A stretch of 64,000 nt of DNA from Botryllus schlosseri (taxonomy: Eukaryota), in contig CM119378.1 in assembly GCA_051294905.1 (NCBI GenBank), positions 13,454,001 through 13,518,000 on the forward strand. Direction: 5' to 3'. Below the pieces are notes generated by a model that saw nothing but the letters and a program-made list of their open reading frames with translations, was not told the DNA's origin and made no database searches. Each line of letters begins with the position of its first letter. Positions within the stretch are counted from its first letter, which is position 1. Positions 6,001 through 64,000 of this stretch are shown here, in pieces. The position numbers were made by a program, and so were the translations under genes.

Positions 6001-9000
6001 AATTGAGGACGACAGTCGGTTGTCCCGATTCTCAGAACTGGATGTAAATTTGAGTCTGTGAGCAGCGATCTGTTCATAGATTTTCTGATTGGACTTTTGG
6101 TTTAACTCCAGGACACACAATGCTGACAGCATCATAACTATTTAATTTAAAATACAATTCTACTTCTTCAGAGACAAAGAGCGAATCTATCTAACACACT
6201 CGCTAATCGGTTTTCCAAGTACATGTACAACACTAAAATAATAAACTTGCTCGTGTTGCCAATCTAAAATCACACTCGTGTTACGAATTAAGTCATTTAC
6301 GTTTCACCTCCTGTTTCTGTGATGTTTAGCAATTGAAACCTTTCAAAATGCATGGGCCGCGAGACCGGGGCTATCGCGCCATCGATAAAATATATATATA
6401 CTTACTATGGTAGGAATATAACTTATCATTATCATGTTGAAATATATTAGGAAAAAGTTTAATCAATAAGTAGCCTACAAACAGTAATCTGATTTTTTGC
6501 ACACATTTGATCAAATATTTTTACAACGTTTCTTCAGGCTTTCGTGGGCCGCACAAAACGGGCCGTAGTTTGCCCATCCCTGCTATAGAATATAAAGTGA
6601 TATATCTAGTGGAGCACAATTAGACTTACATTTTGTTGCAATCATCCATGATCCAATCACCATGTTTGATGTATTTTTCCCCATTAAAGCAGCTACATTC
6701 CTCTTTTATAACGCAACTGCCATCATTTGCCCGATAAAATCCCGGTTTGCAAGCACAGCCTGGCGTGAACAAATAGCCTACTTATTGGATATGCAGGATT
6801 GAATGCTCAAGAACTCAAATTTACTCACCAGGAACACATGCGTCAGGTAAACATATTTCTTCGGGATATTCACAACTCGCTTCACATGCCGCTCCATCAA
6901 AACTGTTTGCGTCATCGCAGGAATAGTACTTTTCATTCTGATGCGAACAAGTAGTGGTTGCATCTGGCAAAGGTAGAGGGAGAGATGAGAGATGTGATAT
7001 GCAGAGATTGATCAAACGAGGAAATTTCGGACATCTGATTTCAAGTATTAGGTCCATGAGCAAGTATTAAATGTAATTAAATGTGACCAACAAGATAGCG
7101 TAATGGGTGAACGTCCAGAGTCTTGATCGGTGTCCCCGGCCGGGTCAGACCAAAGACATGATGATTTGTAAAACTGGTACCGTGGCTTCCCTGGTTGGAG
7201 TTCAGCACTTCCGGGATTGACTCAGAAAGATTTACAAGGCTATATCAGCACCTTCCTTGTCCAGCAGCATATGCTGATCATGCACTCATTGTATGCATAT
7301 GCACAGACCGCGTGTATGTATATTGTATATGACATGAGTTGATGTATATTCCGCCAAAATTTAAATGACACAATCCCGGTTTCTAACATGAACCAGAAAA
7401 TCACATCCAGCAAGTTTGGTAACCANNNNNNNNNNNNNNNNNNNNNNNNNNNNNNNNNNNNNNNNNNNNNNNNNNNNNNNNNNNNNNNNNNNNNNNNNNN
7501 NNNNNNNNNNNNNNNNNNNNNNNNNNNNNNNNNNNNNNNNNNNNNNNNNNNNNNNNNNNNNNNNNNNNTCGACTACTATGGTCATTTACACCAGGCCGAT
7601 ATTCTTCTTATTTTTTCGTAACTGCCGACTTATAGCACGGCCCACCTCTAGGCTTTTGTATATGTAATAGGTACTTATGAATGTAGCTTGAATATTCCCA
7701 ATGCGTTTTGAAAGGCTTCGTAGGCTAACGCTTATGCTTTTTGCCATAATATTTAACATGCCTTGTTACGACTCATATTAATCATCATACAAAGAAGAGA
7801 GGATTATTGGCCTTACTTTTCGAGATGCATTCCATCATTCCACGTTCACATTCACTGAAATAAATATGCTTGTTTGTCAATCGAGTCATATTGCTGCTGG
7901 ATACTCTACTCACGAAAACAATTATTATCAAACAAACTCTAAATTAATAAGGGCGCTTTAAACAGACATGCAGCCAAGACGTAATGCAAAATTTAAAAAT
8001 ATGAATACGCAGCAGTCTTGGCTTGATGCCATAATGTCAATTATACATATGCTGGTTGAAGCAAAAGAAACAGATTAAAGAAGTTCTGCCTGTCATATTG
8101 TGACTAAAGTGAGGTGAGTAGCCTGCTTGTGTGTAATTCAACATTATTGACACAGCTACAGATATAGGCTACTATGGGACTTGGGACATTTATCATATAA
8201 AAATCTCTGTAGTTTGCAGAGGTGGTCAGTAACGAAGTACTTCTACTTTTTCGAAGTACTCAAGTAGTTTTCCTCTACTTCTGGTACTTACTCAAGTAGG
8301 TCTGATTTTCGTTACTTCTACTTCTACTTCGTAATATTTTGTGATCTACTTACTTACTTTTCGATATTTTCAGTTTGTCAAGTAGAAGTAGTTCAATCTT
8401 CCAATCAGGAAGATAGCCTGAGGAATTTCGGGGCTGTTTTCACGGCGTATCAACATTTAATTTTCATAAAAGTTTAGTAAAGCCCAGAATTTTAGCATAC
8501 CACCTTTGAGCATTTCTGGACTAAAAACATGAAATACATTTTAGAAGAAGTATTTATATTTCACTTTCAATTCCCAGTGTCATGTACTTTGAGTTATAAT
8601 TATTATCGGTTCTTTTGTCTTGATAACATACATGTTGAAGGAAAAAAGCAAATGGAGTAATGCCTTTAATTTAAGCTACACAATATGGCATTTTTACGGT
8701 CCACCATATTTTTTATTAACGTTTACTAATCGCGCAAAGTATTTACACCATATCCTATGCAACTTCTCCGTATTGCTCTTCGACTAAACTACGGGCCTTA
8801 TAATATGGGGAATGGCGCTATACCATGCTATTTTCTGAAACGTGCTGTTCGAGAAAACGGAGGATTAGAATCGCATTTCCATATCAATACTATCATTTTC
8901 ATCCCATGATGTGGACGAATACTTATGCTATCGAAAATTGGATACCTGCTGGTATGCATCAATACGAATCATGCTCGTCACCTATCGCATATAGCTCAAT

Positions 9001-12000
9001 TTGCACCTTTTTAAAATCCATGTGAACGAATTAGGATCGTTTTCATAACTACTTACTTACTTGAGTACTTTTAAAGTCAGTCAATTCTATTTCTACTTCA
9101 AGTAGTTTTAGGTTGCCTATAGAAAAAGTATTTAAACTCGTACTTGAGTAGATTTTTTCGTCGCTACTTCTACTTCTACTTGAGTAGATTTCTTGACTAC
9201 TTTGACCACCTCTGCTAGTTTGTTATGTAAAACATACGAGACTGGATCAAGTAAACAGGATTTCTCCACAATTTTTTTAACGAGCACAACGTCGAAAACG
9301 CAACACTCTTTTAGCGAGTGGATCAACATAAAAATCATAAACTAATTTCACACCACAGTAAGATAATTGAAATTAACACAAGAGAAGTGTAAATAATAAA
9401 GGTGTGTTCATATGCTAACCATTCCATATCATCGATCCATGTGGTCCCAATTTGGTACCATGTCCCTTCAAATAAACAAGGACACTCATCTCGTCGAACA
9501 CATTCACCTAATATTAAACGCGAGAGGTGAGTTTGTTATTACTAATTTTTTCTCACTCTCACAACCTTTGTCATTCTCATAATGTCCTTCCGGGCAGAAG
9601 CAACCCTTGTGAGTTGAATCCTTGCATAAGTTTGAAAATGATGAGCAGGATGAAACACATTCGTTTGAGACTCGGTACACGGATGGTTCCTCGCAGTGGA
9701 TGCCTAGCATGATAATTATGCACATGACAGCTGACAGGTCACTGGTCACCCACAGAATTCTTACCACATTCTCCAACAGCTGTCAAAATAACGTCTAATT
9801 CAGAAGTTGCCCTTGCCGAGCATGCAGCGAAAAATCCAGCCTTTATAGAGCAAGCGTGAGCCTTTCTGTCTTTTGAAGTAGACAAGTGACAAACGTCTTC
9901 CCTGCAATTGGTTGCTTGCTCCAAATATCTGGGGCAATTTGTGAAAGACTCAATCACATTGCAAATCGCAGTTGCTGCGGGATCTAAAATTGTAATTAGG
10001 ATATGTTTTCAAGAAGCAACAAGTGATATGCAAGCTTGTATTACAGGGTCAGGACTTTCAGTCCAACAGACAGGAGCTGTTTCTATTCGAAACATGATTG
10101 AATCCTGCCTCAAGCTTTTCCAAAACATCTATATCTGGACAGGATTTTGGATGATCAATTTGGTTACTTTTTCTGCTTTGGATTAAATTTCCTGAACCGC
10201 TTTTTTAAATTGCATCATACCTTTGGAGCATCAAATCCCAAAACTGCCATTTCTCTGTCTAGGTAAGCAGTGTTATTTAATCAATTGAATTAATATCTAA
10301 GACGCAGTTCTACCATGATTCCAGTTCTGCTTAATCAGATTGAATCACAAATATGGTACATAGCATTCTTAATCTGTAATTGTATAGTTAGAATAGGGGA
10401 GTTTGCTGCGAGAGAGAGATGGCGTTGGAGTGAGCGTTGAAGAGAGAAAAGTAGTGTGAAAGAGGGCGAGGTTTGATGGATGGTATGGTGCAATGAATGC
10501 AGTCCTCAAATCAATATTCAAGTTTATTACCGCCAGTCACATATTCAAGTTATTATATTGTTAAGCTGATATTTATCACTAAATATCACTAACAACAACA
10601 CCATTATTAAACTCAAGGCAGGATCTTTTCTAAAAGAACTTTAGGGAAGAGGGTGAAATGAGTTTGAATGCTACATATTGGATTTAATATTCCAAGTGCA
10701 TGATAGATATTTTAGAATATGATTTTTTCACGTTTCGACGCCATTACCAATGATAATCCAAGACATTTGAAAACCGTATAGCAATGGCTCAGATCACATG
10801 GCTTGTCTTGAATATTTATTCGTTTTTTCCTCAACTTTCCCGTCTCTTTGATAGCATGTCACCATTTCAGCCTTAGTAAATGATGTATTTATTGTGACGT
10901 CATGATGAATCATGTAGCGATTTTTTATGATCCAATTTTTTCCCAGCAACTTTATGGCCTACTCAGCGAACACCTGGTAACGATATTCCAGATATGATCA
11001 AGAATCCTTAAGGCTACTAAAGTATAGAATCAGAAGAAATCCTATATATTTCTACTCAATTGAAAGTAGAAGTAGTCATTTCCATGACAAACCAAGCTTA
11101 CTTCAAGTAGTAGAAGTAGGAAAGGTTTGAAGATTGGTCAACGTCCTATTTAAGCAAGTAGCTAACAAGCATTACCATTTGAGTCAGCAGTACAGATAGA
11201 CCAAACTTACTGAAGTGCTGAAACACTTCGTTACTGACCAACTCTGCTAGATTGCTGATTTACACAGTAAGTTCCTACTCACCACATTCGCTCCTGCTGT
11301 AAACAGCGGGGACATAGCCAACGCACGTTCTATCAGTTCTCCAGTTGGCAGCAAATGTGTACACACTTTTCGCCTCGAAAGATGATTGCAATTGGAAGTC
11401 GTCCGACTTTTTGCCATTGAAATTACCCGCGAGACCCATCAACCTGCCGGCGTATTCGCGCGAGACTTTAACGACGATAGAAGCAACCATGTCGTACAAG
11501 ATCTGGACACCCTTTCCTGGTATCGTGAAGAGAACGCTTCCTCCGATTTTCTGGATGTCCGGAAGTCCTGTGAAGAATATGTAAGCAATGTGCAGATGCA
11601 ACATTAGAATAAATGATATATCATGCTATTTATATACAGAGGTGGTCCAAGTATTCAGCAGTGTTGCTTGAGCGGTAGTAGAAGTAATACTGTAAATTTC
11701 TACTCAATTGAAAGTAGAAGTAGTTATTTCCGAGAGATGTAGAAGGAGCAAGTAGCAAATGAATCGGAAGTGGCTACAAGAAAAAGGCAAGATGAATCTG
11801 AGTCGCTGACGCGAAATGACTAATGGCACTAAAAATATGTGCTATCCTCTAATCTAAACTATATTGAGATAACGTTATACAGGGGCTATTTCACTCGGTT
11901 CTTACGAATTTCACTCATAAAAACAATGCTAAGTCGACTCAAAACTACTTCATACTTTTCAGAATCCCAAGTGTAAATAGTAAACCTTCAAGTGGAAGTG

Positions 12001-15000
12001 GAGTAGGCTAGTTGGAAAACATAGCTTATCAGGGATAGCAATAACTCCAGCTATAGACGTCCTTGCTTAGTACAGCGTGAAATGAAAAAATGACATGAAC
12101 CAAAGGTCACTGTTGATTGCATTGTGCAGTGGATATTGTACAATGTACAAAGTGTACATTCTCACCAGACGTAATCGGCAAACTCAACCGTTTGCCAGAT
12201 TTCATAACGTGGCCATTTCGATTCAGGGTGTATTCAACGTGCGCGTTGCCTTCCTTGACTTGAATTATCGGATACTTGTAAAAAACTCCGCCATGCTGAG
12301 AAAATGAGTAGATAAATCACGAAAGGGTCTCGACGCGACTAGGCCAAATAGATTGTGTAACCTCCTCAAACGCAATCAGGACTTGAAAATCGCCGTTTCT
12401 GTCGTGGGTGAGGACATGACTACACGTGTCCTGGTACTGGTACACCGTTCCGTCAAACGAGACGTAGTGGAAACTCCCAGTCGCTTCGGCGACTCCAAGA
12501 CAAGCCTTCTCTGTGCATTTCCAATGGCCGGCTTCACACGTGCTGAAAATTTCCCATGCGATGAATAAATAATTAGGCTACAACAATTCGATTTCGCCGA
12601 TCTACATCCGATTATATCTATATTAAGCATTTGGCAGTCTTTCAATAGGTGAGTACTGAGTAGGCTACTGAGTAGCCACTGAGATCGCAGCCTCGCTGTA
12701 TTTATGGTTGTGGGCCAATTCTCACCATGTGTTATTGCATTCCTCGAAGATTTGTTCCCCGGGATCAAAATACAATCCATTGGCTTCGCACTGACAGTGT
12801 CTCGATTTCACACAAACGCCGTCCTGTAGGTAGGTTCCTTGAAGCATAATGGAATATGATGGCTAAGCGACGTCGCACGACAAGGTCATGACTCGTGAGA
12901 CACCGAAAACTTACCTTTCACGCATTCGCATCCGGGCAAGCACCTATGCGATCCACAAATGTTAACCGTCTCTCGGCTACTATGGGCTGCGCACGTACGA
13001 GAAGAATCGACACATTCGCTCCATTGCATTCCTAACCGGCATCTTTCAACTGACATGACAATGAGCGACATGTATGACATGCGCGAGACGTAGCACAATC
13101 AGTGAAAAGTAAATACCCATGAGTTTGGTTCATAGCCCTTACCGCAGTTTGCTAGCGAGCGCCAAGCTCCAGGACTGCCGTAGTTGAATGAGCATTGCCT
13201 TGAATATTCCGTAAGGAGGTCACACAGAATATCGTCACGTGTCTGAATATCTTCCGTACACACGACGAGGAGACAGTGTTTATAGAAGCTGCTAGGATTC
13301 ACGTAGGTTACGCAATCACGGAACGCATTGCTGATTAGAACATTGCAAACTCGATGAGTACTCTGTAGAGACATGCAAACATGATGTTAGGTATATATGA
13401 AGCGATTGGGTAGTACGTAGTAGCCGAATATAATTCATCTTAAACTTGAAAACGGTCCTCACGTCTAGAATAAGACATGTTTCGATAGATGCAGTAGGGT
13501 TGACAATCGACTCGTCTATACATTCCAGGCTGTATCTCTCGATATCAGAGGGTGAGTGATTTTCTGTAAAATATTTGCGTTAATATGTTCATGTTCATTG
13601 ATCATCCTACAATAAACCAAGTGACGTTATTATTCACCTCCAACATCATCATCTGCTTTTCCATTCTGATTTCCACACAAGCCGCAAGAGCTGAAAGTCT
13701 CAGGAACTGATATCGCAACGACGTGCCTTCGGACGTCAACATCCACACGAAACTCGCTATCGTAAGTAACGGACAACACGTTCGTACCTGCAGTTACTTC
13801 AAAGCCACTTTCGAAATATGGAACGGACCTGTTAAATATCAGCGTTAAAATTATTTACGTAGCGTCTAATAAAGCTCATATATTCACTCACACTACTTTT
13901 CCGTTGAATGTGACTACATCGGATACGAGTATGTCGGTTGCACCTTGTCTTACTCGCACATGGGATATTTCCGAGATGTTATTTCGCGTTATCCATGCCT
14001 AAATTTCATGAGCGCTTAATTTCCTCACATAGGTGCATTCTGCTGCGTGGTATAAATAGAGCAGCTCTGACTCCATCTTCGCTTCGAATTGCAATTCACT
14101 CGTACGCGGTAGGCGTAGTAGCCCTACTAGTACAATTTTATTATCATTCTTATCGATTCAAGATACCATAAATGCAATTATGCTGGTTTGGTCACAATCA
14201 AACTAATGATGCTGTGGCGTTGCTGAGATGATTCTGGGCCTCTCGATTTCTATCCAAGCCATGCCTGGATACATTATGTGTATAGGTGTATGGAAAGAAA
14301 TGGCGTAAGGTGATGTATGAATCTCTGCCATATTTCTGCCGCGTTCGCCGAAAATATATCGATTCACTGATCAGATCATCAATATGAAAAAAAATTGGCT
14401 GATCATCTAGGAGTCGTTTCTAGGGTTTTCATGGGTGCTGATTACGAATATAATATTAGTTTTGCTAGATTAACTCTAGTTTAGAAGATATGTATGTATA
14501 CCCCAAAATTACCGTATCTACCGCCTAAATATTTCATTTGGTAGAAAGTAAATAGTAGCTTTTTTTACTTTTATACTGCGCATATATATCTTATTTCCTA
14601 TGAAGAACTCACATGTCGTCCTCATTAATTCAATAAATGTTAACATGACCTGATGCGAGCTACAATACTCATATGCGTATCATCTCATTTGACAATTTGA
14701 CAATTTTCTGCTGAGCGAACACAAAGTGCGTATACCATCCCTAATAAACGATAAGTTCAAAGCTGGTATCTTTGATGTAACTCAGATTCCAATACCGATG
14801 AAAGATTCCAAGTTCATATTAAGAAAGGGGCTTACTGCGTGGAATTCCTTCTAGGATGTAGTAAATAAAACTTTTTGGAAGATCACAAAGCACCCAGCTA
14901 CAAACAGTGCGTGGGTCCGAAAATTGGTATCTGCATATGGAGAACTTGGAGCAGATATCAAAGTTCACTCCCTGTTCAGTCATCTTGATATATTTCCTGA

Positions 15001-16596
15001 TCATTTTGGTGATTAGAGTGAAGAGCAAGGGGACAGGTTCCACCAAAACAACAAAAGAAAGATATCAGTACGGATGAGATGAACATATCATGGCAGACTA
15101 TTGCTATGGAACCTTTCGATAGACTGCACTAAATTGCCTACAAGCAAAAATCGTACAAGAAACAATTTTGTTTCAAGGTAAATTGTTAAAATTATATTCC
15201 GACTGAATATTTTGAATTAACAGTAGATGGTTGGCGTAAAACTGATTGAATTAATGCAATGTTATTTGAGTACTTAGGCTTATGATTGGAGTTTTTTTAG
15301 GTACTTACATGCTTTCCGCGAAAGTCCCCAACTATGGTAAATCTAATACCTCTAAATATAATGATGTTGCTGTATTTTGATTTAAAACAGTATTTAGTGT
15401 GTGAAAATAACAAGAAGATTGAATTTCTGAACTCTAGAATACGATTGCGCCTTTTTTATCCAGCCCATAATGCGAAAATATGAGATTTTAGTCAAAATAG
15501 CCCCATGGATTATCTCCAAAACCAGAGCCAATTTGAAAAAAACTAAGGTCATATTCGGAATCAGTGGCCTTCCGAACCCCCAAAACCCCTCTTACTTTGT
15601 CTGCCTAAAATATGTGTTGATAGTGGTGACAGCATGTAGCATAAAGACTAATAGTGCTTGACAATGCTGAGATGCTGAGCTATGTCAGTCGGCGAATTAC
15701 GGGCTTCGATAACAACGGTACCAAACGTCAGATGTGATGTGTTCCTGTAGACATATCGGGTCGATCACATCAAAAAGTATTGGCCTACGCCCATATAGCC
15801 CATGCGTCCAAATGTCGCATATATTCAGAACTTTTCTGGTGTCTGAACCCCTATTCTACACCGGTATCAACACGCAAATACATGAACATTAAATCATACA
15901 GTGAGATTGCGCAGTGATTAGGCTTAAACGCAGAATATTTACCGAAAAGTTATCCATGTCATTGCACTGGCCCACAGCCAGAACCTCGCATTGCCCTTGA
16001 AAGATTGAGCTAGCACCATCCAGAGTTAGGATAGTGCCCTTACCGAAAACGACACAAGTATTTGAAGTAGACGCTGACGATATTCCCCATTGTGTCATCG
16101 GAACAGCGGACGTGTATGGATGCAAAGCTGTGCAAGAAACAAATAATAAGGATAATAAATTTAAATTTCCGCTGCCAATTAGCGAACTCTAACAATGAAC
16201 AATTTCGAAAGAAACATTAATTCAAATACTGCTAGCATGAATATATTGAATACTTACTGTACTTGCAGCCGATACCAGCCCGTTCGCTGCCACATTGCGT
16301 CTCATCGTGGACGATAGATGCTGGATATAGTCCTTCATACATTGGGTCAGAACCTGACCCGTCTCCGCTCAAAACACTTGATTCGGAGTGCTGACGAGGC
16401 GAGTAAAGGCTAGAATAAGCGATGATTAAGCGCTTATAATTGCGGTACAGCATTTAATGAAAATACTTGAATGCTTCTTCACTTCGAGCAACTTCGGCAA
16501 TACCTGAATCACATTCACAAATATATTGTTTTGGCCGTTTATGAACAAAATTAATTATGAATTCTTACCCAGAAGAAAAAGATTTATAAGTCCCAT
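1..16596 (-). CDS. Gene A: secreted VWF-like/gel-mucin-like protein, 5' part (signal peptide-D1-D2-D'-D3-start of VWC-like region); continues past the left edge
   Basis: 31 exons with GT-AG sites and consistent phases: 16569-16596, 16467-16503, 16258-16409, 15943-16127, 13892-13998, 13638-13828, 13463-13563, 13143-13362, 12915-13049, 12726-12837, 12362-12542, 12166-12295, 11283-11567, 9765-9983, 9566-9703, 9420-9507, 7817-7854, 6829-6963, 6630-6759, 4728-4866, 4558-4668, 3856-4098, 3674-3784, 2262-2411, 2049-2205, 1659-1810, 1494-1593, 1378-1427, 586-802, 84-156, <1-23 (4,138 nt). Motifs: [10 protein letters not shown] (D1), HYVSFDG (D2), HYKSFDG and [10 protein letters not shown] (D3), [18 protein letters not shown] (C8-3), [10 protein letters not shown] and ILDEMTQKC (TIL3). 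The first two micro-exons ([17 protein letters not shown]) are less certain than the rest. Confidence 0.9.
2456..3012. mobile_element. hAT-type MITE with internal GACTCGAGTC palindromic repeats, inserted into another MITE
   Basis: TIR CAGGGTTGTAA/TTACAACCCTG; perfect 8-bp TSD GTGGTCAG (2448-2455, 3013-3020). Partial or degenerate copies near 22330-22450, 36026-36420 and 57894-58060. Confidence 0.88.
3345..3640 (+). mobile_element. tRNA-derived SINE, family 2 (degenerate copy)
   Basis: A-box TAGCATAATGG at 3349-3359. The body (atcaaagacatgat..ctggta.ccgtggcttccc..ttacaaggcta..ttgtccagc.gcatatg..catgcactcat.gtatgca) aligns with the copy at 7092-7370. Confidence 0.65.
5037..5695. mobile_element. 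hAT (Buster-like) MITE
   Basis: TIR CAGGGGTCACCAAC/GTTGGCGACCCCTG; TSD CTGTAAAC/CTGTAAAG (7/8). Confidence 0.82.
5751..6582. mobile_element. hAT (Buster-like) MITE
   Basis: TIR CAGGGGTAAGCAAACT/AGTTTGCCCATCCCTG; TSD CCATAGAC/CTATAGAA (6/8); subterminal GGGCCGC repeats. Confidence 0.75.
7092..7370 (+). mobile_element. tRNA-derived SINE, family 2
   Basis: A-box TAGCGTAATGG at 7096-7106; homologous to 3345-3640; core gccgggtcagaccaaagac..aaaactggtaccgtggcttccctggttggagttcagcac. Confidence 0.68.
7426..7568. other. Assembly gap (143 N) inside a gene A intron
   Basis: Run of n; the flanking exons 6829-6963 and 7817-7854 are phase-compatible. Confidence 0.98.
7569..7660 (-). mobile_element. 3' fragment of tRNA-derived SINE family 1
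   Basis: Reverse complement of about 17695-17785 (tcgactactatggtcatttacaccaggccgat..cgtaactgccgacttatagc.cggcccacctctaggctttt). Confidence 0.8.
8217..9214. mobile_element. hAT-type MITE with AGTA/TACT-rich subterminal repeats (full-length copy of the most abundant family here)
   Basis: TIR CAGAGGTGGTCA/TGACCACCTCTG; TSD GTAGTTTG/CTAGTTTG (7/8). Fragments near 2443/3013, 10990-11246, 11637-12005, 23195, 24740-25170, 31770-32040, 35357, 41091, 48706 and 52905. Confidence 0.85.
14753..15110 (+). pseudogene. Fossil DNA-transposase C-terminal fragment inside a degraded element (about 14270-15620)
   Basis: With stops and frameshifts it reads [73 protein letters not shown]. This matches a widespread invertebrate TE motif I recall as HSHLDFFP..SDEQGERFHQ..MADYCW. 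Subterminal IR ggtgctgattacgaatat/atattcggaatcagtggcc. Confidence 0.75.
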
Positions 16597-21709: not shown

Positions 21710-22770
21710 ATAATGTTTTGAACACGAACACAGCGTCGAATCAAACAGGTGTGATTTAGCTAGCCAGTAGCCACTGCAAAACATCGAACGCTGTTGCATT
21801 ACGATCAAACGTGGTTTCACTGCTTCGCACCGGCCTCTTGAATCTGTCAATCCTTCTGTCACGCGCAACATCTTGTCGAAAAAAACACTGATTCCAGTCT
21901 CGATCGTAACAAATTAGGTCGTGATTAGCGATATCTCCGTGCTTTGTGCACCGTACCGTACATTTTTAGGTTGAACATTGTAATTCCAATCCAGGATTCG
22001 GGTATACTTCTGATAAGTAGGCCTAGGCTATTTATTAATCTCATGGCCAAATATCTTCAAATAATATGAATGTGTCCTAGTGATTGAAATGTCGGAACGC
22101 CGAACGGCCCATTGTTGTTACATCGTTGGAGCGTACCACCATCTTTAAGTGACTTTATATAATAACATGGTTTAGCGACCAAAAATGTATAACTAACAGA
22201 TTGCCAATGGTTACCATAACTACTTGCTTAGATAGCGAAATACCAAGCTGCGACCTTCTGATCTATTACTGTTCCCCTGATACGCGATTAGTTTGTTGGG
22301 TCCATGGTTCTAACAAATTCAGGGCATTCCGAGTAACTCCGAGTCCACTCGAGTCATTTTCATTTTGCCATCGAGTTAGCTCGAGTCTGATTAATTATAA
22401 GAAAGCTCGCGTCTGAGTAATTCCAAGAAAGCTCGCGTCCGAGTCCAACTCACAAATTTCAGTCACGAATCGTCTAAGGGTCAGGTTTTGTCATCATGAA
22501 TTGGAAATGTGACGAAATAGTGAATCTTCCACTGCATGGTAGCGTGTGCAGTTGATTTGATAGTGCAGTTTGATGAATACTTTCAGGCTTTCGGAGCAAT
22601 TTAAGAGGGAATTTTCACTTTATAACCTGAAATGATATATGTGACACTTATATATTGTCAAAATAATACGTCGTCGCGGGGCGCGTTTTTGAGACCTCTG
22701 GTGTAGCTCCTACGATCACCATAAACTGAGCTGATAAAAGAAAATCACGACCAGCTACATGCAGGTATCA

Positions 22771-22776
22771 TTTATT
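22771..22776 (-). promoter_or_regulatory. Probable polyadenylation signal of gene B
   Basis: First AATAAA on the minus strand, about 190 nt downstream of the stop codon. Confidence 0.55.
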
Positions 22777-22962
22777 TGCACCAGCGTGGGACACATACGA
22801 TCACATCCCCGATAAAAAGTTGGTATTGCACACGAAGATGAAACGCATCCTCCACTATTCTACTAATTTACAAGTGCAAATAAAAGTCAAAATAAAGAAA
22901 GAGGTGAACAGTAATCAGTATCGTTTCCGGTCAGTATATTGTGTCGAGGGCGGTTGTTTCAA

Positions 22963-24680
22963 TTACTCTACTGTCGCGGTCATGTCGCCGGAAATCTCAC
23001 TGGGGTTTTCCCCGGTGCATGTGGAGCAATCAGCGCACGCGCAGTCGGTGATTGTGTCGTATTCGTATTCCTCCGATGTGCCGTCTTCGCAAGTCAGGAC
23101 GACAGCGCGGGTTTCCGTCTTGGTCGGATTGCATCGCGAACAACCGGCAGCAATGGCTCCTGCGTAATAGTCAACATACGGTAAAACTAGGCGATAGGTG
23201 GTGAAGTACTTGTACTTTTTCGAGTTACTCAAGTATAGGTTTTGCCAACTTGCACTACTTAGTCAAAGGATTGTGTCTTTAGAATACTCCCACTTCTACT
23301 TGAACAGTTTTTAGGAAAAACTAGACATTGGTTTGTACCAACCTTGCATTATTATGCGAGTGAAATTGTCATGAGAAGCCGCTGTAATTACAATAAATAA
23401 ATATCGTCGCTGTGGAATCAAAGTGGCATATGTTCACTTTTTTCAAATTTCGAGAAAATCAAGTTTGTTGCGAAATTTTCATTTTTTCGGACATATCTTG
23501 GTCACGGTTATGGTTTTCACATTGTTTCAAACTTAACCATGACCAAGATATAGTTAAAAACTTAATTCTTCCAAAATTTGTAAAATAGACATAAGGCACG
23601 ATGTGTTTTGACTGATTCCACTTCTACTGGAACACTTTTGAGGAATAATTACCTCTTACAATTTGGATTTTGAAAAGTAGAAAGTAGTGTCGATGTTGTA
23701 AGCTGGAAACTGGAAACACTTTTATGAGTGAATTGTCTTAAGAACCGCACGGAATGGCTGCTATACTATGGTAACTGAACATATTTTCAAATATTGCCCT
23801 ATTTACAGTGTCATTCGTCCTTTTGCATTACTCGCTAAGATAGATTCTGCAATTTCGAAAGTATCCAATACTGATCAAACCCGCGACCATGTCTACTTTT
23901 TGGAACTATTTAGAAAGACGAAAACATCAAGATGGCCGTTATCGTTATCGTCCTCGGGTTAGGGTAAGTTTTTGGGTTATACAGTCACATGCTGAAGTGA
24001 CGCATGCTGATGTGTTCCATGCTGAACTGTCGTTTTCCATTGTGTCGCATGCTCATATGTCGGGCAACCCTCTGTGGTCCGTGGACATATGAGCATGCGA
24101 CATTACAGCATGCGAGACTTCGGCATGCAACAATTTCGCATGCGACACATGAGCATGTGGGTTAAATTACGGGTTAGGGGTAGGTTAGGGTTGGATTTAT
24201 GGTTTGGTTAGGTTTAGGCTTTAGGTTAGGTTAGGCTAGGTTAGGTTAGGTTAGGCTATGTTTCGGGTTAGGGTAAGTTTTTGGGTTATACAGTCACATG
24301 CTGAAGTGACGCATGCTGATGTGTTCCATGCTGAACTGTCGTTTTCCATTGTGTCGTATGCTCATATGTCGGGCAACCTCTCTCTGTATCTCATACAGTC
24401 CGCATGCTGAACAATATACTAAAAGTCAATGAAGGGAGCGTGGCAGGCTCCTTTGCCTTTGTGAGTCCCGAATTTTCTCCCTGTCCACGCCTGCGACTAT
24501 ATAGCCTATAGCCTATATATATTACAGAGATTTTAAACGAACCGTTAACAGAAGTGGTGGTGACGGCGCAGTTTCCGCCGCAGGTGGCAGTCTTGACCAT
24601 GTCTGGAGACGAGCACAATTTTCCTCCGATGTTGATCTGGAAGAGCTGCTCCACTTCTTGCACCACGCAGCCTTCGATGT
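22963..24680 (-). CDS. Gene B C-terminal cystine knot (CTCK) and acidic tail
   Basis: Exons 24543-24680 and 22963-23186: CVVQE..LCSS..TCGGNC..GCSRCNPTKTE..TCEDG..DCACADCSTC-TGENPSEISGDMTATVE*. The CxGxC and CxC knot motifs are present. Confidence 0.9.
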
Positions 24681-27600
24681 CTGCGCGAGAATACGTAAAG
24701 GCGTGAGCGCCGACAGCAATTGTTCAGCACTGAAGTCACTTCACGACTTCATACTAGAGACTTCTAATTTCTGGGTTTGTGTACTTCCACTTACTCGAGT
24801 GCTAACACTTTTCAGACTACTTTCACTTTAGCTTCGATAAGTATTTCAAAATACAAATTACTTGCTTTTCATGTATTAGAACAGATTGGCAGCGATTTTA
24901 GGAGCGATACTGCCAAGACAATTGGACTATCCAGACCTTATATGACTGTGATGGAAACAGATTATAACCTCGAAAATCGCACCTGTTTTGATTGCAATTT
25001 CACATTCTGAGTTGGTCACAAAGATCTGTCTTGCAATTTTGTAACCCTGCACCGGATTACCAACTGCATTCGATGTCAAAAGTACTCTTTCTGCTTGATG
25101 TACTGATACTTGTACTTGGTAGCGAGTAGAAATTAACAGCATTGCTTCTACTTGAACTAGAGCACCAACAAAAACCACCTCTAATTCTAATGTCATACGT
25201 ATGGTAACATAACAATACTCAACATTCATAACTGAGGGAAAGAGAGCTTCCAAAAATAATTCCATTCTACCTAAGCAAATCAGATCACATTAGACTTGTT
25301 TTAATAAATGAGAAAAAGAATCCGACATCGTAGTTTTATAGCACAGCCAACATGTTACCGGGCAATAACTGGAATCTCATTCTTTACGGTTGTGTATCTA
25401 TTCATGTTACCCCCCGGAAAGCATCATACATTATCCCGTTAGTTTAGCAGCACATAACTCACCGGAACACATGTAGATCGGACAGCCGCAACCATCCTTC
25501 TCCTCAGACGTCAAAGCGACTGTTCCATCCTGGCATTTCGGCGGGTCGCTGCAGCCGTGGCAACCTGAAAAATTTGAATTCTTTGAATTTGCATTTTGAA
25601 AAGTAGAGTGTAGTAGAGTGTCCGTTACTAACGGATTAGGACATTCGACTCTTCAAATTTTCATGGATGTGAAGTCATATTTGGTGATAGGACTGTTGAT
25701 GTACAAAGTTCTTTTCATTTCTCTACTAGTTGCTGACGATTACCACAGACAAGTGCAAGCCGAAAATATATGGGTTTGTTTCAACATGAATATGTCATTC
25801 AATTGTATATCGAAGTGATATACCTCCGAGAATCTCTTCAAATTCTCTAGTTGCTGGCAATTACCACTAACGAGTATTAGCCGAAAGTATTTGGGTTTAT
25901 TTCAATATGAACAGATTATCCAAATGTAGTTCCAATCCAGGTTCCGTATCTCCAAGTCTCTCATCAAATACTCACATTTCAGCGGAATACACTCCTCTGA
26001 GTTCGCAGTTCTGCGAATCGTTCCCTCCGGACAGAAGCAGCCTTCCACTTCCACAGATCCGGTCACGTTGAGGATAGGGTTGTCGCAAGACAAGTCCCGT
26101 TTGGCATCCAAGTCGCATTCTCGGTATTCCTGAGACGCGTGCGGGCATGTCGCATCGAGACAGTTCAGGGCGCTGCGCCACGGGATGCATACTCCGTGCA
26201 TTTCGTTGAGAGACGCATATTGCGCTACGGAGGCCGAGCTGCAGGCGTCGCATTTCCTCGTAAGGTTGCTTTCCAGGGACAAGTCGTAGGCGCATTTCGA
26301 TTTGTAGACGCTGGGGTCGATGTAGGCGTTTGCCTCTTTGAACACGGGGTGCGTGGAGAGGACCTGAAAACAGACATATCATGTGTAATTGTTCAGTGCA
26401 TGTACACTGAATTAAAATTAACAGAAGATAATTTATACACGGCTTGTCAGAACTGTTAGATCTTGACCAACATTATACAAAGAAAAGCTACTTCCAAAAC
26501 TGCAGTCCTGATAGTTTGACAAACTCAGAATTTTACATAATAAGACACCCTCTCATTCAAAATATAACTTCCCTTACCTCACACGGATTCACATCGCACA
26601 CACTACACTTGCTGTGGCTGAGATGACATTTATTGGAGCAGTCGATGCATTCGTCGACGGGCAGCTCCCCACAGTCCGGATATTCGGCTGGTGGTGGGCA
26701 GTCAGGCTCGGTCGGGAAGCAGTTAGGTTCATCATAGTCTCTGGCGAATTTCATCCATCCTTCTCCGAATTTGTCAATGCTGACTTGGTCGGATTTGTCG
26801 GCGATCGCTCGGACGCTGAAATCCTTGTCGCGGAAATCGTCACTGACCTCGTTGTTGCATGAACCTGAATACGTTTGAAGTAAGGTGTTGAAGACTTAAG
26901 ATGAATTCAAACAGATTTATGCATATGGTTGAGTGGCTGTTTTTTTTATCAATCATGTTGTTTCGACATCAATGGTCACTTGCGACTTTCCGACTAATAG
27001 CACGTCCCATTTTGGTTCTAAGCTTTTGTAAAACACTGCTCGCGTTGATTGGATGGCAACGAGAAGCCTAGATAACACTTCAACATTTAGGTGCCGATTC
27101 TGTGGCAGACCAGTCCTACAGAAGTGCTACATGGTACTACAATAATAGTATCAGAACTACAACATAATACTAATAGTAATACAATACACCTCTGAAGGGC
27201 TGGATAAAATCAATCTACATTGAAGTATAAGCAGTCAGTAAATTGAGAATGTGACACAATATTAATCGTAACATTGAATGCTGAAGGCTTTTTGTTACAG
27301 ACTACTTAGTAACCTTCATGCTGCAACAGTATTTAAGTGATGCTTGGTGGTAACATGAAAAGGATCAACAAGGACAATTAAACCAGAATGGTTTTAGCAT
27401 GATTGATGGCCAAAACAACTGAAATATTGAGGTTAAATAATGCTCACATATTGTTTCCTAATCAGTTACCATCATTTCGTAGGAAATATTATTGCTGCGC
27501 AAAATCTAATCTGGAGCGTAGCTTTAGATTATAGGACAACAATGCGCCATTGTGTGAAACCAGTTAAAATATAACGATACAAGAGCAACTGCTGTGTGCT

Positions 27601-30600
27601 TCATATTTGGAAACGGTCATTTCCAATCATGAAAGCGTGTTCGCTTGTGGCGGTATTGAACAATCTCTTACAAACTCTACGAAAATACTTACCGCAGAGT
27701 CCCATCATCTTGCCCTCGAGCGACTCGTAAGGAAGGGTCAGAATCAAAGACTGCATCCATTGTCTCGTTTTGTAGACAATCTCCATGTTGAGAGATCGGA
27801 TTTCGATTTTCAGCTGTTTGTAACCGAATTCCCTGACCGAGACGTCCTTATCCGCCGAGACCCACGGACTGCGGGCACCGATTTCTTCTCCATCCCTGAG
27901 GAACTAGACAAAGAATTTGTATAAACATATAGGATATCGAAACGACCATGTGTGGTATACCCATCTAACAACCACATAGGCCCCACGATATTATCAGTCA
28001 AGAGAAGACGGCAGAAAAATGCACTCAGATTTTATGCAATACCTTGAGTCCGAAAGTGAAGGTGTAGTTCACTTCTCTGTGAATGACGGACATCGTTTTC
28101 AGACAGGAGAGGGACTTCATTCTGGCGCTCTGCCATCTGCACAGTTCGTTGTCGATGATGACTTCGGTTTGGTTGAAACGATATTCCTTCATCAGCGTGT
28201 AGGTGCATTTTCCTTGGTAATCGTACGAGAATCCGTCGAATGTGGTGAAATGCGGGTCGCCGTACGCCTGGCACGTGCCTAGAAATTGGTAGCAGTCGTA
28301 TCTTAAGCGGCATCCAATGGAATAAATGAAAATTCAAATATTCAGTGGCTATTCATGACAAAACATTATCCATAAAATGGACTGACAATACATATGCTGT
28401 AATCACGGATCCTATGTAGCGATGTTTTTATCTATGCACAATACGAATTGTATTGGTATTTTTGCGCTATAATATGGATCAATTCATATTGAAAACCAGC
28501 AAGATCATAACATCATATTTATCATGATGTGACACATTAGTAGTAGGAATGAAACAACTGTATTTAGGAATTACTAACATCCAATTTTCGGTAGTAGATA
28601 TCAATGATTTACCATTCAATCCATTACATTGCCATATACGAGCGACTGGACAAACTTCTAAGGACCGATGTTTGGAATAAGATATTATCCTTTAACACTG
28701 CCCTTTCCATTGTAATTTTAGCTCAGTATTAGAGGAACATATAATTATCATACATGGGCAAACCCATTCTCTGCAGCATCCCTCCTTTGTAGACGCGAGG
28801 TACGGGCTTCCACCATTGACACAAATCGGCTTTTCACTCAGGCACGTGTATGTATCGTACTCCTCAATCCTGTACGAAGACTTCTTGGCGCTTGCATACG
28901 TGCACTGCAGCATTTTACAGTGGTTGTCCTTGTTAATCCACGAAACTCCAAGCTGTGGAAGATTTGACAAATCAAGTATGCGGCTTTTAATCTACACGAA
29001 AGATTTTGTACCTTGCGCGGGATGCCGTTGTAGTCGATGCATTGCATAGTCGAGTCATCAGGAATGCAGACGTATTCAGGACAGCAGCATTTCACGGCTG
29101 ATACGTTTCTGACGGCAATTTGGCCTAGCGGGCATGTGGGCTCGACGCATTTGGTGTAATTACATCCTGTGTAGAGACAAGATCACATGTAGAGATAACA
29201 TTGGTAACATTCTAAATATGTTTCTATAAATAATCATTTATAATTCTTACAATTACCCCTATGCCATAGAAATGATATCAAGTCAATTATATCAAATGGA
29301 TGAAGCCTGCTATGATACTATACTTGCTAGAAGTAAGTGATACAACCATATCAAAGGTCATGCATCTCACCATTAACCACAGATAAGCAGCAATAAGCAC
29401 TCAAATGATCAATGTTTTGTTTACAATGTGTTACGTAGGCTGGAATTCGTTTCTACGTGAAAAGGAATCATACTGAGTTGAAAGCATAAAAAATTACTTT
29501 GGAATAGATCTGAAAAGGAAATATTACAGCAATTCTGTCAACGGTATTACGGGTATATGTAGTGATGGTCAAATTCCATGTCTTTAATTAAATTTCTGAT
29601 TTTAATCCGTCGATCAGAAACATTGTCAATTTACATTCTTTTCAAATATGGGTGTCTAAATCCACCAATGTCACATGTGATGTGTTGTGTATGCAAGTAG
29701 TCATATCAGCAACGCCCTAACACGACATAATGAAAAAATTTCTATCTATTTCTGCTAACAAAACATTCAAAGTTTGTTGATTGAAATAATAAAATCAACT
29801 TACTGCATCCTTGTTGCTTACAGCATCTGTCGACGCTCATATCCATCCAGCTGTAGACATTCTTTTCTGGGTCTTCACACGTTGTAACCTTGGCCGGGCA
29901 CGGTGTGGGTCCTGCAACACAAGACACGCTAAGTACATATGCAAGCCTACAATTTCAACGGCGATACTTACGGCAGCCATAGATCGGACAACCGCAGTCG
30001 TCTTGATCGCCAGTGTCGTAGACTTCGTCACATTCATCCTCACAAGTCTTCTTCGGGCACGGGTTTCTCTCTGTAGTAATGGTATGGAGTTGTAGGTAGA
30101 TTTGTTGTGAGCGACATGACACATACTCTTTTAGCGAGTGCATAAATAGCTTTTATTCACCAGCAACACTTTGCACGTATTACCGATGATTACAGTTGAG
30201 AAAGTTTTTAAAGACAAAATACAAGTTAGCTCTCTTGTTCACCGGACCACAACCTGGATCTCGCCTTCCGACACATGCCACCTTTTTGTCACCTGTTCTT
30301 TTACTATTTATTCAGTGTGCATGCCTCCTTTCTTTACAGTGCCTCGGCCAGGTGGGTGTCTGATTTCGAAGACTACTCCAAGTCATTTCGACACCTTCCT
30401 ATCTTTCAGTGTATCGAAGTCTTGTGGTGTATTGAAATGATGAAATTTTTAGCAATCAATTGAATTTAATATTTCTGTACGTTATTTCTTATCAAGCGTA
30501 CAGAGAACCTTTCGTTTTTATTACTATATTTGTATGTCGAGGCAGCAGTTTGACTGCTTTACATAGTCGAGTTGTTTTGACTGCTTATTATTGCATCGAA

Positions 30601-63569: not shown

Positions 63570-64000
63570 CTGAATCATTCCAAAGTAAATTTGGATCAGC
63601 ACAAATTTAGTGGTGCTTAGTTTGCATTGATATATCTCGAGAATGGCCAGTTGATCCAAACAGTGCTTGTGAGATAGGTCGTATTGAATGCGGTGGGATG
63701 CGACAGGTGTAATGAGTTAGTATCCAAAAAAAGAAGTTGGCGTCTCGACGAGGTGTTATAAATCATGAATTCAATGTATTGATATAACTCCTTAGAAATC
63801 ATAACGACAAACTTAGCAAAATGCAAGCATATATACCATAAAATAGGCAATATTATCCTCCGAATTCGTTTTTGTAAAAATAAAATAGTCACGGGACACG
63901 TGCTGACCTTACGCAGTTTCGTGAATTGGGCGAACTTGGACATCATTTTCACGCAGTGTGTCACCATGTGTTAGAAAGCAGAAACACCCGGCCAATATAA

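What the first reader, a model, noticed from the sequence alone, without database searches (positions are those of the whole stretch)
22963..23186. Cystine knot carries Arg at the VWF Cys2773 position and an extra tail cysteine
Seen: GCSRCNPTKTE aligns to VWF QCSCCSPTRTE, so the second Cys of CSCC is Arg (codon at 23134-23136). The end reads CACADCSTC versus VWF CKCSPRKC. The total is still 11 Cys, with one relocated to the tail. Established: VWF dimerises through C2771-C2773', C2773-C2771' and C2811-C2811', and C2773R is the type 2A (IID) von Willebrand disease mutation that impairs dimerisation. Inference: this protein uses a rewired inter-chain disulfide scheme, possibly branching or hetero-pairing with gene A.
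Basis: partly seen in the sequence, partly recalled or inferred. Interest (0 to 1): 0.72.

Follow-up and report, generated by a model that had tools for sequence, protein, structure and literature searches.

The report
Cystine knot with moved dimerising cysteine
The tail-end "cystine knot" of a large von Willebrand factor/mucin-like secreted protein really carries an arginine where human VWF needs a cysteine to pair up its chains, and has an extra cysteine further down; the change is genuine, expressed and shared by an old neighbouring gene copy, so it is a natural variant of a known dimerising module, not an error.

Summary
Observation confirmed. On the minus strand the last two coding exons (24680-24543 and 23159-22966) encode a C-terminal cystine knot with 11 Cys. 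It reads G-C-S-R-C-N-P where VWF, MUC2 and norrin have C-x-C-C, and its tail is C-x-C-x-x-C-x-x-C. The Arg codon is CGA at 23136-23134.

One correction: RNA shows the last exon starts at 23159, not 23186.

It is not an error or a rare allele:
- An independent DNA assembly and RNA contigs carry it.
- A divergent expressed allele has AGA, still Arg, with 13 of 15 coding differences synonymous.
- The tandem paralogue, gene A, has the same CSRC and CADCSTC. Its knot lies 28.5 kb beyond the window, and synonymous sites between the copies are saturated.

Six other VWF/mucin-type knots in this genome keep C-x-C-C. The C-x-x-C-x-P form is the gremlin/DAN pattern, which explains the Pfam DAN hit.

Each chain still has three non-knot Cys, so the VWF pairing (C2771-C2773') is impossible and another must be used. 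Which one was not determined. Branching and obligate pairing with gene A have no support.

Verdict: a new variant of a known kind, of moderate interest. Orthologues in other species could not be reached. The scan holds no earlier record of this on other DNA.

The parts
25463..25564 (-). Third-last coding exon of gene B: small Cys-rich module (GCHGC...CGCPIYMCS) just before the knot
   Evidence: AG/GT boundaries and phase 1 that joins in frame to the next exon. Boundaries inferred from sequence only, not checked in RNA.
24543..24680 (-). Penultimate exon: first half of the cystine knot, with Cys 1-4 including the C-G-G-N-C ring motif
   Evidence: Sequence. The donor end is confirmed by RNA loose ends that read ...TCTGTTAAC onto 23160. 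Gene A has the same exon at 67% identity.
23160..24542 (-). Last intron (1383 nt), GT..AG, carrying interspersed repeats
   Evidence: Spliced RNA contigs and reads. The homologous intron in gene A is only about 63 nt.
22966..23159 (-). Coding part of the last exon: second half of the knot (7 Cys) plus a 17-residue acidic tail
   Evidence: Pfam DAN 27.5 bits (cut-off 22) and Cys_knot 19.9 bits (cut-off 24).
23140..23142 (-). Cys codon TGT, equivalent of VWF C2771 / norrin C93 / gremlin C141 (unpaired within the chain)
   Evidence: Gap-free alignments to 4nt5, 7qcu and 5bpu. The gremlin primer sequence shows C141 is the first Cys of C-S-F-C-K-P.
23134..23136 (-). Arg codon CGA at the VWF C2773 position; AGA in the alternative allele and in gene A
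23131..23133 (-). Cys codon TGC, equivalent of VWF C2774 (intrachain partner of the first knot-domain Cys)
   Evidence: the intrachain pairing is taken from PMC8626975.
23017..23043 (-). Tail C-A-C-A-D-C-S-T-C: knot Cys 8 and 9, then two extra Cys at +3 (23028-23026) and +6 (23019-23017)
   Evidence: Identical in gene A apart from one residue (C-S-C-A-D-C-S-T-C).
22963..22965 (-). Stop codon TAA
22756..22962 (-). 3' UTR with AATAAA at 22776-22771 and a poly(A) addition site near 22756
   Evidence: Poly-T loose end at 22756 in X6, and RNA depth falls off there. Signal located.

Best explanation
What it is. This is the genuine, expressed C-terminal cystine knot (CTCK) of gene B. Gene B is one of two tandem, anciently duplicated genes for large secreted proteins of the VWF/gel-forming-mucin superfamily. 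Its layout is VWD-C8-TIL assemblies, a long array of Cys-rich modules, a D4-like VWD-C8-TIL, a small Cys module and then the knot.

What is kept and what has changed. The eight intrachain Cys of the VWF-type knot are all in place. The three remaining Cys are arranged differently:
- the C2771 equivalent is kept;
- the C2773 equivalent is a conserved Arg;
- the tail has two Cys (+3 and +6 after the C-x-C) instead of one.

Likely mechanism. I infer that the domain still makes disulfide-linked tail-to-tail dimers in the ER, as VWF, mucins and norrin do, but with re-partnered bonds. The most likely scheme is one symmetric tail-tail' bond on the dyad plus two reciprocal bonds from the C2771-equivalent Cys to the other tail Cys of the partner chain. 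That restores three interchain bonds.

Shown versus inferred. Shown: the sequence, its expression, its splicing, its conservation, and its uniqueness among this genome's knots. Inferred: covalent dimerisation and the pairing.
For: - Real and expressed: an independent DNA assembly, RNA contigs, raw RNA reads, a spliced junction and a poly(A) site.
- Under purifying selection: the divergent allele has 15 coding differences, 13 of them synonymous and none at a Cys, with Arg kept through CGA>AGA.
- Conserved in gene A: 66 of 93 residues and 11 of 11 Cys are identical, and the Arg codon is AGA. Synonymous sites are saturated (pS 0.79) and dN is 0.24.
- Register fixed by gap-free alignments to MUC2, VWF and norrin.
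- Superfamily context: VWD, C8 and TIL hits on neighbouring exons.
- An odd number (3) of non-knot Cys per chain, as in VWF and norrin. In those proteins all three make interchain bonds clustered at the dyad (PMC6333368; PMC3828517).
- The +3 tail Cys matches norrin C131 spacing and the +6 Cys lies next to VWF C2811 (+5).
- Split-domain complex prediction scored 0.39 against a best control of 0.01, called weak support.
Against: - No structure or biochemistry exists for this domain.
- The complex prediction was run on the two exon peptides as separate chains. Its score cannot separate re-assembly of one domain from dimerisation, no contacts were returned, and it was calibrated on pairs of single chains.
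- In VWF the same Cys-to-Arg change cripples dimerisation, so compensation by the tail Cys is an assumption.
- The two tail Cys form a C-x-x-C that could simply close on itself.
- Arg conservation between A and B is no stronger than the domain average. Non-Cys identity is 67%, and the 14-residue identical run has P = 0.14 by shuffling.
- No orthologue from another species could be examined.
Confidence: 0.5

Rival explanations
1. Gremlin-like scheme. The two tail Cys (C-S-T-C) close an intrachain loop, and the single remaining Cys (the C2771 equivalent) makes one symmetric interchain bond, or stays partly free. The result is a dimer held by one disulfide instead of three.
For: - The C-x-x-C-x-P motif is that of gremlin, whose first Cys (Cys141) alone makes the covalent homodimer (PMC5085234).
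- This genome's own gremlin-like gene has C-S-F-C-K-P.
- Pfam scores the exon higher as DAN (27.5 bits) than as Cys_knot (19.9 bits). Gene A scores 35.3 bits for DAN.
- VWF p.Cys2773Arg still dimerises 27% of monomers. The authors suggest alternative bonds such as C2771-C2771'.
Against: - Gremlin has no tail Cys.
- A single bond would be a weak link for a protein built like a force-bearing polymer.
- In VWF and norrin the tail Cys is interchain.
Confidence: 0.25
2. The knot is not a polymerisation module here. It is a DAN-like, non-covalently dimerising or ligand-binding (for example BMP-binding) domain at the end of a protein rich in VWC-like modules, and its extra Cys bond elsewhere or stay free.
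For: - DAN-type motif and Pfam hit.
This comparison is from my own knowledge and was not tested.
Against: - The gene has the D-assembly head and the D4-C-CK tail typical of VWF/mucin polymers.
- All VWF-type intrachain Cys and spacings are kept.
- Three unpaired Cys per chain in a secreted protein would be unusual if they were not bonded.
Confidence: 0.12
3. Obligate A-B heterodimers or branched polymers: the changed Cys set makes gene B pair with gene A or link more than two chains.
For: The two genes lie in tandem and share the unusual pattern.
Against: - Their Cys patterns are identical, not complementary.
- The count of unpaired Cys equals that of VWF, so nothing forces a third partner.
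- Co-expression was not tested.
Confidence: 0.08
4. Artefact, rare allele or decaying pseudogene.
For: None found.
Against: - The codon is CGA or AGA in every data set, across four studies.
- A Cys codon is two changes away from CGA.
- Gene A is the same.
- The transcript is spliced and polyadenylated.
- Allelic differences are 13 synonymous to 2 non-synonymous.
Confidence: 0.01

Closest known systems
VWF C-terminal cystine knot (CK/CTCK) domain, PDB 4NT5
   Same: - All eight intrachain Cys, with the same spacings from the C-x-G-x-C ring to C-x-C.
- The C2771 equivalent is present.
- Gap-free alignment.
- It sits at the very C-terminus after a D4-like VWD-C8-TIL and a small Cys module.
- Three non-knot Cys per chain.
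   Different: - Arg instead of C2773.
- Tail C-x-C-x-x-C-x-x-C instead of C-x-C-x-x-x-x-C.
- No VWA domain was found on the exons scanned; this scan was not exhaustive.
Human VWD type 2A/IID mutant p.Cys2773Arg
   Same: The identical residue change at the identical position.
   Different: In VWF it is pathogenic: 73% of monomers stay undimerised and odd-numbered multimers appear (PMC6333368). Here it is the conserved wild type and comes with an additional tail Cys.
Norrin and gel-forming mucin (MUC2, 7QCU) cystine knots
   Same: - Same fold family by sequence.
- Norrin's C-terminal interchain Cys131 lies at +3 after C-x-C, like the first tail Cys here.
- This genome's mucin-type knot (L015) shares CEDGS..EYEY and also has two tail Cys.
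   Different: They keep C-x-C-C and the reciprocal C93-C95'-type bonds. Ke et al. call the three-disulfide dimer a conserved feature of norrin, mucins and VWF.
Gremlin / DAN-family cystine knots (Pfam PF03045)
   Same: - The C-x-x-C-x-P motif, with the first Cys unpaired within the chain (gremlin Cys141, covalent homodimer).
- Pfam DAN scores above its cut-off.
   Different: DAN proteins are small stand-alone BMP antagonists without tail Cys. This knot ends a giant VWD-C8-TIL protein and has two tail Cys.

Membership tests
CTCK / eight-membered-ring cystine knot (Pfam PF00007 Cys_knot, SMART CTCK) | Ring motifs C-x-G-x-C and C-x-C, with six knot Cys in canonical spacing | tested here: met
   C-G-G-N-C lies in exon 24680-24543 and C-A-C in the last exon. 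Alignment to VWF, MUC2 and norrin is gap-free.
CTCK / eight-membered-ring cystine knot (Pfam PF00007 Cys_knot, SMART CTCK) | Extra CTCK-specific pair (VWF C2724-C2774 equivalents) present | tested here: met
   The first Cys (E-G-C) and the Cys before N-P are both present. The bond itself is inferred from PMC8626975.
CTCK / eight-membered-ring cystine knot (Pfam PF00007 Cys_knot, SMART CTCK) | Score over Pfam's gathering cut-off | tested here: inconclusive
   The last exon alone scores 19.9 bits against a cut-off of 24. The spliced domain has no reference and could not be scanned.
VWF/mucin/norrin-type dimerising CK (three interchain disulfides) | C-x-C-C: both reciprocal interchain Cys (VWF C2771 and C2773) | tested here: not met
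   The C2773 position is Arg in gene B, in its alternative allele and in gene A.
VWF/mucin/norrin-type dimerising CK (three interchain disulfides) | A Cys shortly after the final C-x-C (VWF C2811, norrin C131) | tested here: met
   Two such Cys, at +3 and +6.
VWF/mucin/norrin-type dimerising CK (three interchain disulfides) | Covalent homodimer formation | not testable with these tools
   There is only a confounded split-chain prediction: 0.39 against a best control of 0.01, called weak.
DAN family (Pfam PF03045) | HMM score over cut-off and the C-x-x-C-x-P motif | tested here: met
   27.5 bits for gene B's last exon and 35.3 bits for gene A, against a cut-off of 22.
DAN family (Pfam PF03045) | Small stand-alone secreted protein consisting essentially of the DAN domain | tested here: not met
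   The knot is the last domain of a gene of more than 40 kb with VWD, C8 and TIL domains.
VWF/gel-forming-mucin superfamily (D assemblies + C-terminal CK) | Repeated VWD-C8-TIL assemblies at the N-terminus and a D4-like assembly before the CK | tested here: met
   - VWD: 63280-63606, 59035-59292, 28028-28333.
- C8: 57300-57533, 25905-26378.
- TIL: 61920-62207, 25905-26378.
All.
VWF proper | A1-A2-A3 (VWA) domains between D3 and D4 | tested here: inconclusive
   No VWA hit on the 20 exon-sized ORFs scanned. The central region is filled by Cys-rich modules, but not every ORF was scanned.

The most novel reading that the evidence does not exclude
A VWF/mucin-type polymer protein has evolved a different three-bond lock. 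The reciprocal C2771-C2773' pair is replaced by bonds from the retained Cys to a new tail Cys. The tail C-x-x-C may additionally act as a redox-sensitive switch that lets the tail-to-tail link be opened or exchanged, including A/B mixed dimers. If so, this would be a natural suppressor of the 2A/IID-type defect.
Probability: 0.2. Interest if true: 0.55.

Novelty: new variant of a known kind. Interest (0 to 1): 0.35.

Why it matters
VWF, mucins and norrin are all described as using the same three interchain disulfides (PMC3828517), and losing C2773 causes bleeding disease in people. Here a natural protein of the same superfamily has fixed exactly that loss, keeps it under purifying selection in two old gene copies, and has an extra Cys nearby. 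It is a ready-made test of how far the dimer lock of cystine knots can be re-wired, and of whether a tail cysteine can compensate for the missing C2773. Beyond that it is a modest, lineage-specific variation on a fold already known to be plastic.

Tried and rejected
- Orthologues, representative library. phmmer of the last exon against 1.84 billion representatives gave only low-complexity false hits (P0001-P0004, with no Cys at the match) and one 112-aa knot fragment with canonical C-S-C-C (P0005).
- Orthologues, the search for homologous proteins. It found no candidate, but its length window (49-156 aa) excludes full-length kin, so this blank means little.
- Orthologues, metagenome scan. A scan with the A/B alignment gave 359 pattern matches and no relative.
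- Penultimate exon against Pfam and PDB. No significant hit. It is too short, and its identity as the knot's first half rests on the Cys pattern, the splice junction and gene A.
- Complex prediction. The spliced domain has no reference, so I gave the two exon peptides as separate chains, two copies each.
  - Score 0.39, best control 0.01, verdict 'weak support'.
  - The runs agree in at least 77% of contacts, and the partner's pLDDT is at least 63.
  - In the tool's calibration the mark was reached by 51 of 78 solved complexes and 2 of 108 mismatched pairs.
  - The design cannot separate intradomain re-assembly from dimerisation and no contacts were returned, so I do not count it.
- AlphaFold of the spliced knot: not run. 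It would need about 95-110 typed residues without a reference.
- Zhou & Springer 2014 (PMC3962159): not held. The geometry of the three VWF bonds is therefore taken from PMC6333368 and the norrin paper.
- Special conservation of Arg: rejected. The 14-residue identical run around it is not exceptional (P = 0.14).
- Base error, rare allele and pseudogene: rejected.

Full report
**What is at the coordinates.**
The finding lies on the minus strand at the 3' end of a large multi-exon gene, gene B.

- The open frame 22966-23262 ends in ...AIAAG-C-S-R-C-N-P-T-K-T-E-T-R...L-T-C-E-D-G...D-C-A-C-A-D-C-S-T-C...T-A-T-V-E, then TAA.
The neighbouring Cys codons are TGT (23142-23140) and TGC (23133-23131).
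- The upstream exon (24680-24543) reads I-E-G-C...K-L-C...T-C-G-G-N-C... and supplies four more Cys.

**Gene model and expression.**
Four public runs were laid on 22700-23400.

- RNA-scale contigs (X6, X12) and raw RNA-seq reads (X23, 12 reads) all leave the genome at 23160. They continue with the reverse complement of the end of the penultimate exon (...TCTGTTAAC).
- The junction is therefore ...GTT AAC G|GA GCC ATT..., and the last exon begins at 23159.
- The mature sequence across the junction is ...S-V-N-G-A-I-A-A-G-C-S-R-C...
- A poly-T loose end at 22756 marks the 3' end, with AATAAA at 22776-22771.
- Depth in the raw RNA run is tens of reads at about 6% sampling of the run.
- The total of 11 Cys (4 + 7) stands.

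**Is the Arg real?**
- An independent genome-scale assembly (X5) matches the reference over the whole stretch.
- The raw RNA reads (22 of 22) and one of two X12 contigs carry G>T at 23136, which turns CGA into AGA. That is still Arg.
- This haplotype differs from the reference at 15 coding positions in 194 nt. Of these, 13 are synonymous, one is E>D in a loop, one is S>R in the post-knot tail, and none touches a Cys.
- CGA is two substitutions away from either Cys codon.
- Error and rare allele are excluded, and the exon is under purifying selection.

**The paralogue.**
Searching the window's own genome (495.5 Mb) with each knot exon finds one close relative of each. They lie at G000:C8:13425520-13425870, 28.5 kb beyond the window's low end and on the same strand. 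This is the 3' end of gene A, whose 5' part (D1-D2-D'-D3-like exons) lies at about 578-16188 of the window.

- Gene A reads ...A-I-E-A-G-C-S-R-C-N-P-T-K-T-E-T-R...C-S-C-A-D-C-S-T-C....
- Its splice sites sit at the same positions, but the intron is about 63 nt.
- Over the 93-residue knot the copies share 66 residues and all 11 Cys.
- The Arg codon is AGA in A and CGA in B.
- Synonymous differences are saturated (pS 0.79) and dN is 0.24.
- The duplication is therefore old and the Cys pattern has been kept.
- The Arg is conserved no more than an average residue. Non-Cys identity is 67%, and the 14-residue identical run around it has P = 0.14 by shuffling.
- No third close paralogue exists.

**Register.**
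- phmmer of the last exon against all PDB chains hits MUC2 (7qcu), VWF CK (4nt5, 9qrv) and norrin (5bpu and others). All alignments are gap-free and place C-S-R-C under C-S-C-C or C-H-C-C.
The first Cys equals C2771, Arg equals C2773, and the second Cys equals C2774.
- In the tail VWF has C-K-C-S-P-R-K-C (one Cys at +5) and norrin has C-H-C-E-E-C (one at +3). Gene B has C-A-C-A-D-C-S-T-C (Cys at +3 and +6).

**How unusual is it?**
Pfam scores the exon higher as DAN (27.5 bits, over the cut-off) than as Cys_knot (19.9 bits). Gene A's knot scores 35.3 bits for DAN. I took a census of knots in this genome with PF00007, PF03045 and the exon itself.

| Knot type | Number | Motif |
|---|---|---|
| VWF/mucin-type | six | C-x-C-C |
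| Slit-like and CCN-like | two | C-C |
| Gremlin-like gene | one | C-S-F-C-K-P |
| Genes A and B | two | C-S-R-C plus two tail Cys |

- The C-x-x-C-x-P form is therefore the ordinary DAN-family form. In gremlin-1 its first Cys (Cys141) is the unpaired one and makes the covalent homodimer (PMC5085234; the mutagenic primer shows S-C-S-F-C-K-P).
- The mucin-type knot L015 shares CEDGS..EYEY with A/B. It keeps C-x-C-C but also has two tail Cys (C-S-C-S-A-S-C-E-C).
- A second tail Cys may thus have preceded loss of the C2773-type Cys. This is inference only.

**What the protein is.**
- Exon-sized ORFs of gene B hit VWD (three places), C8 (two) and TIL (two).
- In between lies a long array of Cys-rich modules that Pfam does not name.
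- The order in the window is VWD-C8-TIL, TIL'-E'-like exons, VWD-C8-TIL, modules, VWD-C8-TIL, a small Cys module, then the knot.
- This is the VWF/gel-forming-mucin plan, without detected VWA or mucin (PTS) regions.
- Other agents' notes call this genome a sea squirt. I did not check that.

**Mechanism.**
Established knowledge:

- VWF has intrachain bonds C2724-C2774, C2739-C2788, C2750-C2804 and C2754-C2806. Its interchain bonds are C2771-C2773', C2773-C2771' and C2811-C2811' (PMC8626975; PMC6333368).
- Norrin has the same scheme (C93-C95', C95-C93', C131-C131'). Ke et al. call the three-disulfide dimer a conserved feature of norrin, mucins and VWF (PMC3828517).
- VWF p.Cys2773Arg leaves 73% of monomers undimerised. 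The authors suggest the remainder forms through alternative bonds such as C2771-C2771'.

In genes A and B the eight intrachain Cys are intact, and three Cys per chain are left over: the C2771 equivalent and the two tail Cys. The VWF pairing cannot form. An odd number of spare Cys means at least one intermolecular bond or a free thiol.

- My best reading (0.5): one symmetric tail-tail' bond plus two reciprocal bonds from the C2771-equivalent Cys to the other tail Cys.
- Main rival (0.25): an intrachain C-S-T-C loop plus a single gremlin-like symmetric bond.
- I could not discriminate between them.

**Limits of the tests.**
- The spliced domain has no reference, so it could not be handed to the structure tools.
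- A split-chain complex prediction gave 0.39 against a best control of 0.01, 'weak support'. The mark was reached by 51 of 78 solved complexes and 2 of 108 mismatches in calibration. The runs agree in at least 77% of contacts, and the partner's pLDDT is at least 63. By design it is confounded and it returned no contacts.
- Orthologue searches came back empty for technical reasons.

**Verdict.**
- It is a real, expressed, conserved variant of a known dimerisation module, with a precedent for its central motif in the DAN family.
- 'Rewired' is a sound inference that remains untested.
- 'Branching' and 'pairing with gene A' are unsupported, because gene A's pattern is identical and not complementary.

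Noticed in passing
window 578-16188 (minus strand) and G000:C8:13425520-13425870 (L002 1465-1878): Gene A is a tandem paralogue of gene B on the same strand. Its D1-D2-D'-D3-like exons fill the low end of the window. Its knot lies 28.5 kb beyond the window start. Its D4-like C8-TIL exon is 73% identical to gene B's.
   Followed up: partly
window 23204-23323: A short stretch of the last intron is piled up by many DNA contigs. Summed depth reaches about 2900 against about 80 for the flanks in X5, with many loose ends at 23278 and 23311-23323. This points to a high-copy interspersed repeat.
   Followed up: no
window 23950-24420: The last intron holds two near-identical copies of about 110 nt. They flank a run of CCTAA/CCCTAA-like units, which is (TTAGG)n-like on the other strand.
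   Followed up: no
window 22756-23159: A second haplotype of gene B is very divergent.
- It has 15 differences in 194 coding nt, and more in the 3' UTR.
- Some reads show 3-nt and 7-nt deletions at 22942 and 22946.
- It is the only form seen in RNA run X23, and one of two forms in X12.
   Followed up: partly
window 23131-23400: One X6 contig runs unspliced from the last exon into the intron at about a fifth of the depth of the spliced form. This is either retained intron or pre-mRNA, or DNA carry-over.
   Followed up: no
L015 (G000:C2:6736738-6736989) and L005: A mucin-type knot with C-S-C-C and two tail Cys is followed in the same open frame by a long Thr/Pro-rich stretch. It is the knot most like those of genes A and B.
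   Followed up: partly
L020 (G000:C5:9146290-9146631): A single-exon gremlin-like DAN gene (95.7 bits) with C-S-F-C-K-P and no tail Cys. It served here as the in-genome comparator.
   Followed up: no
window 7426-7568: A run of 143 N lies inside the gene A region.
   Followed up: no
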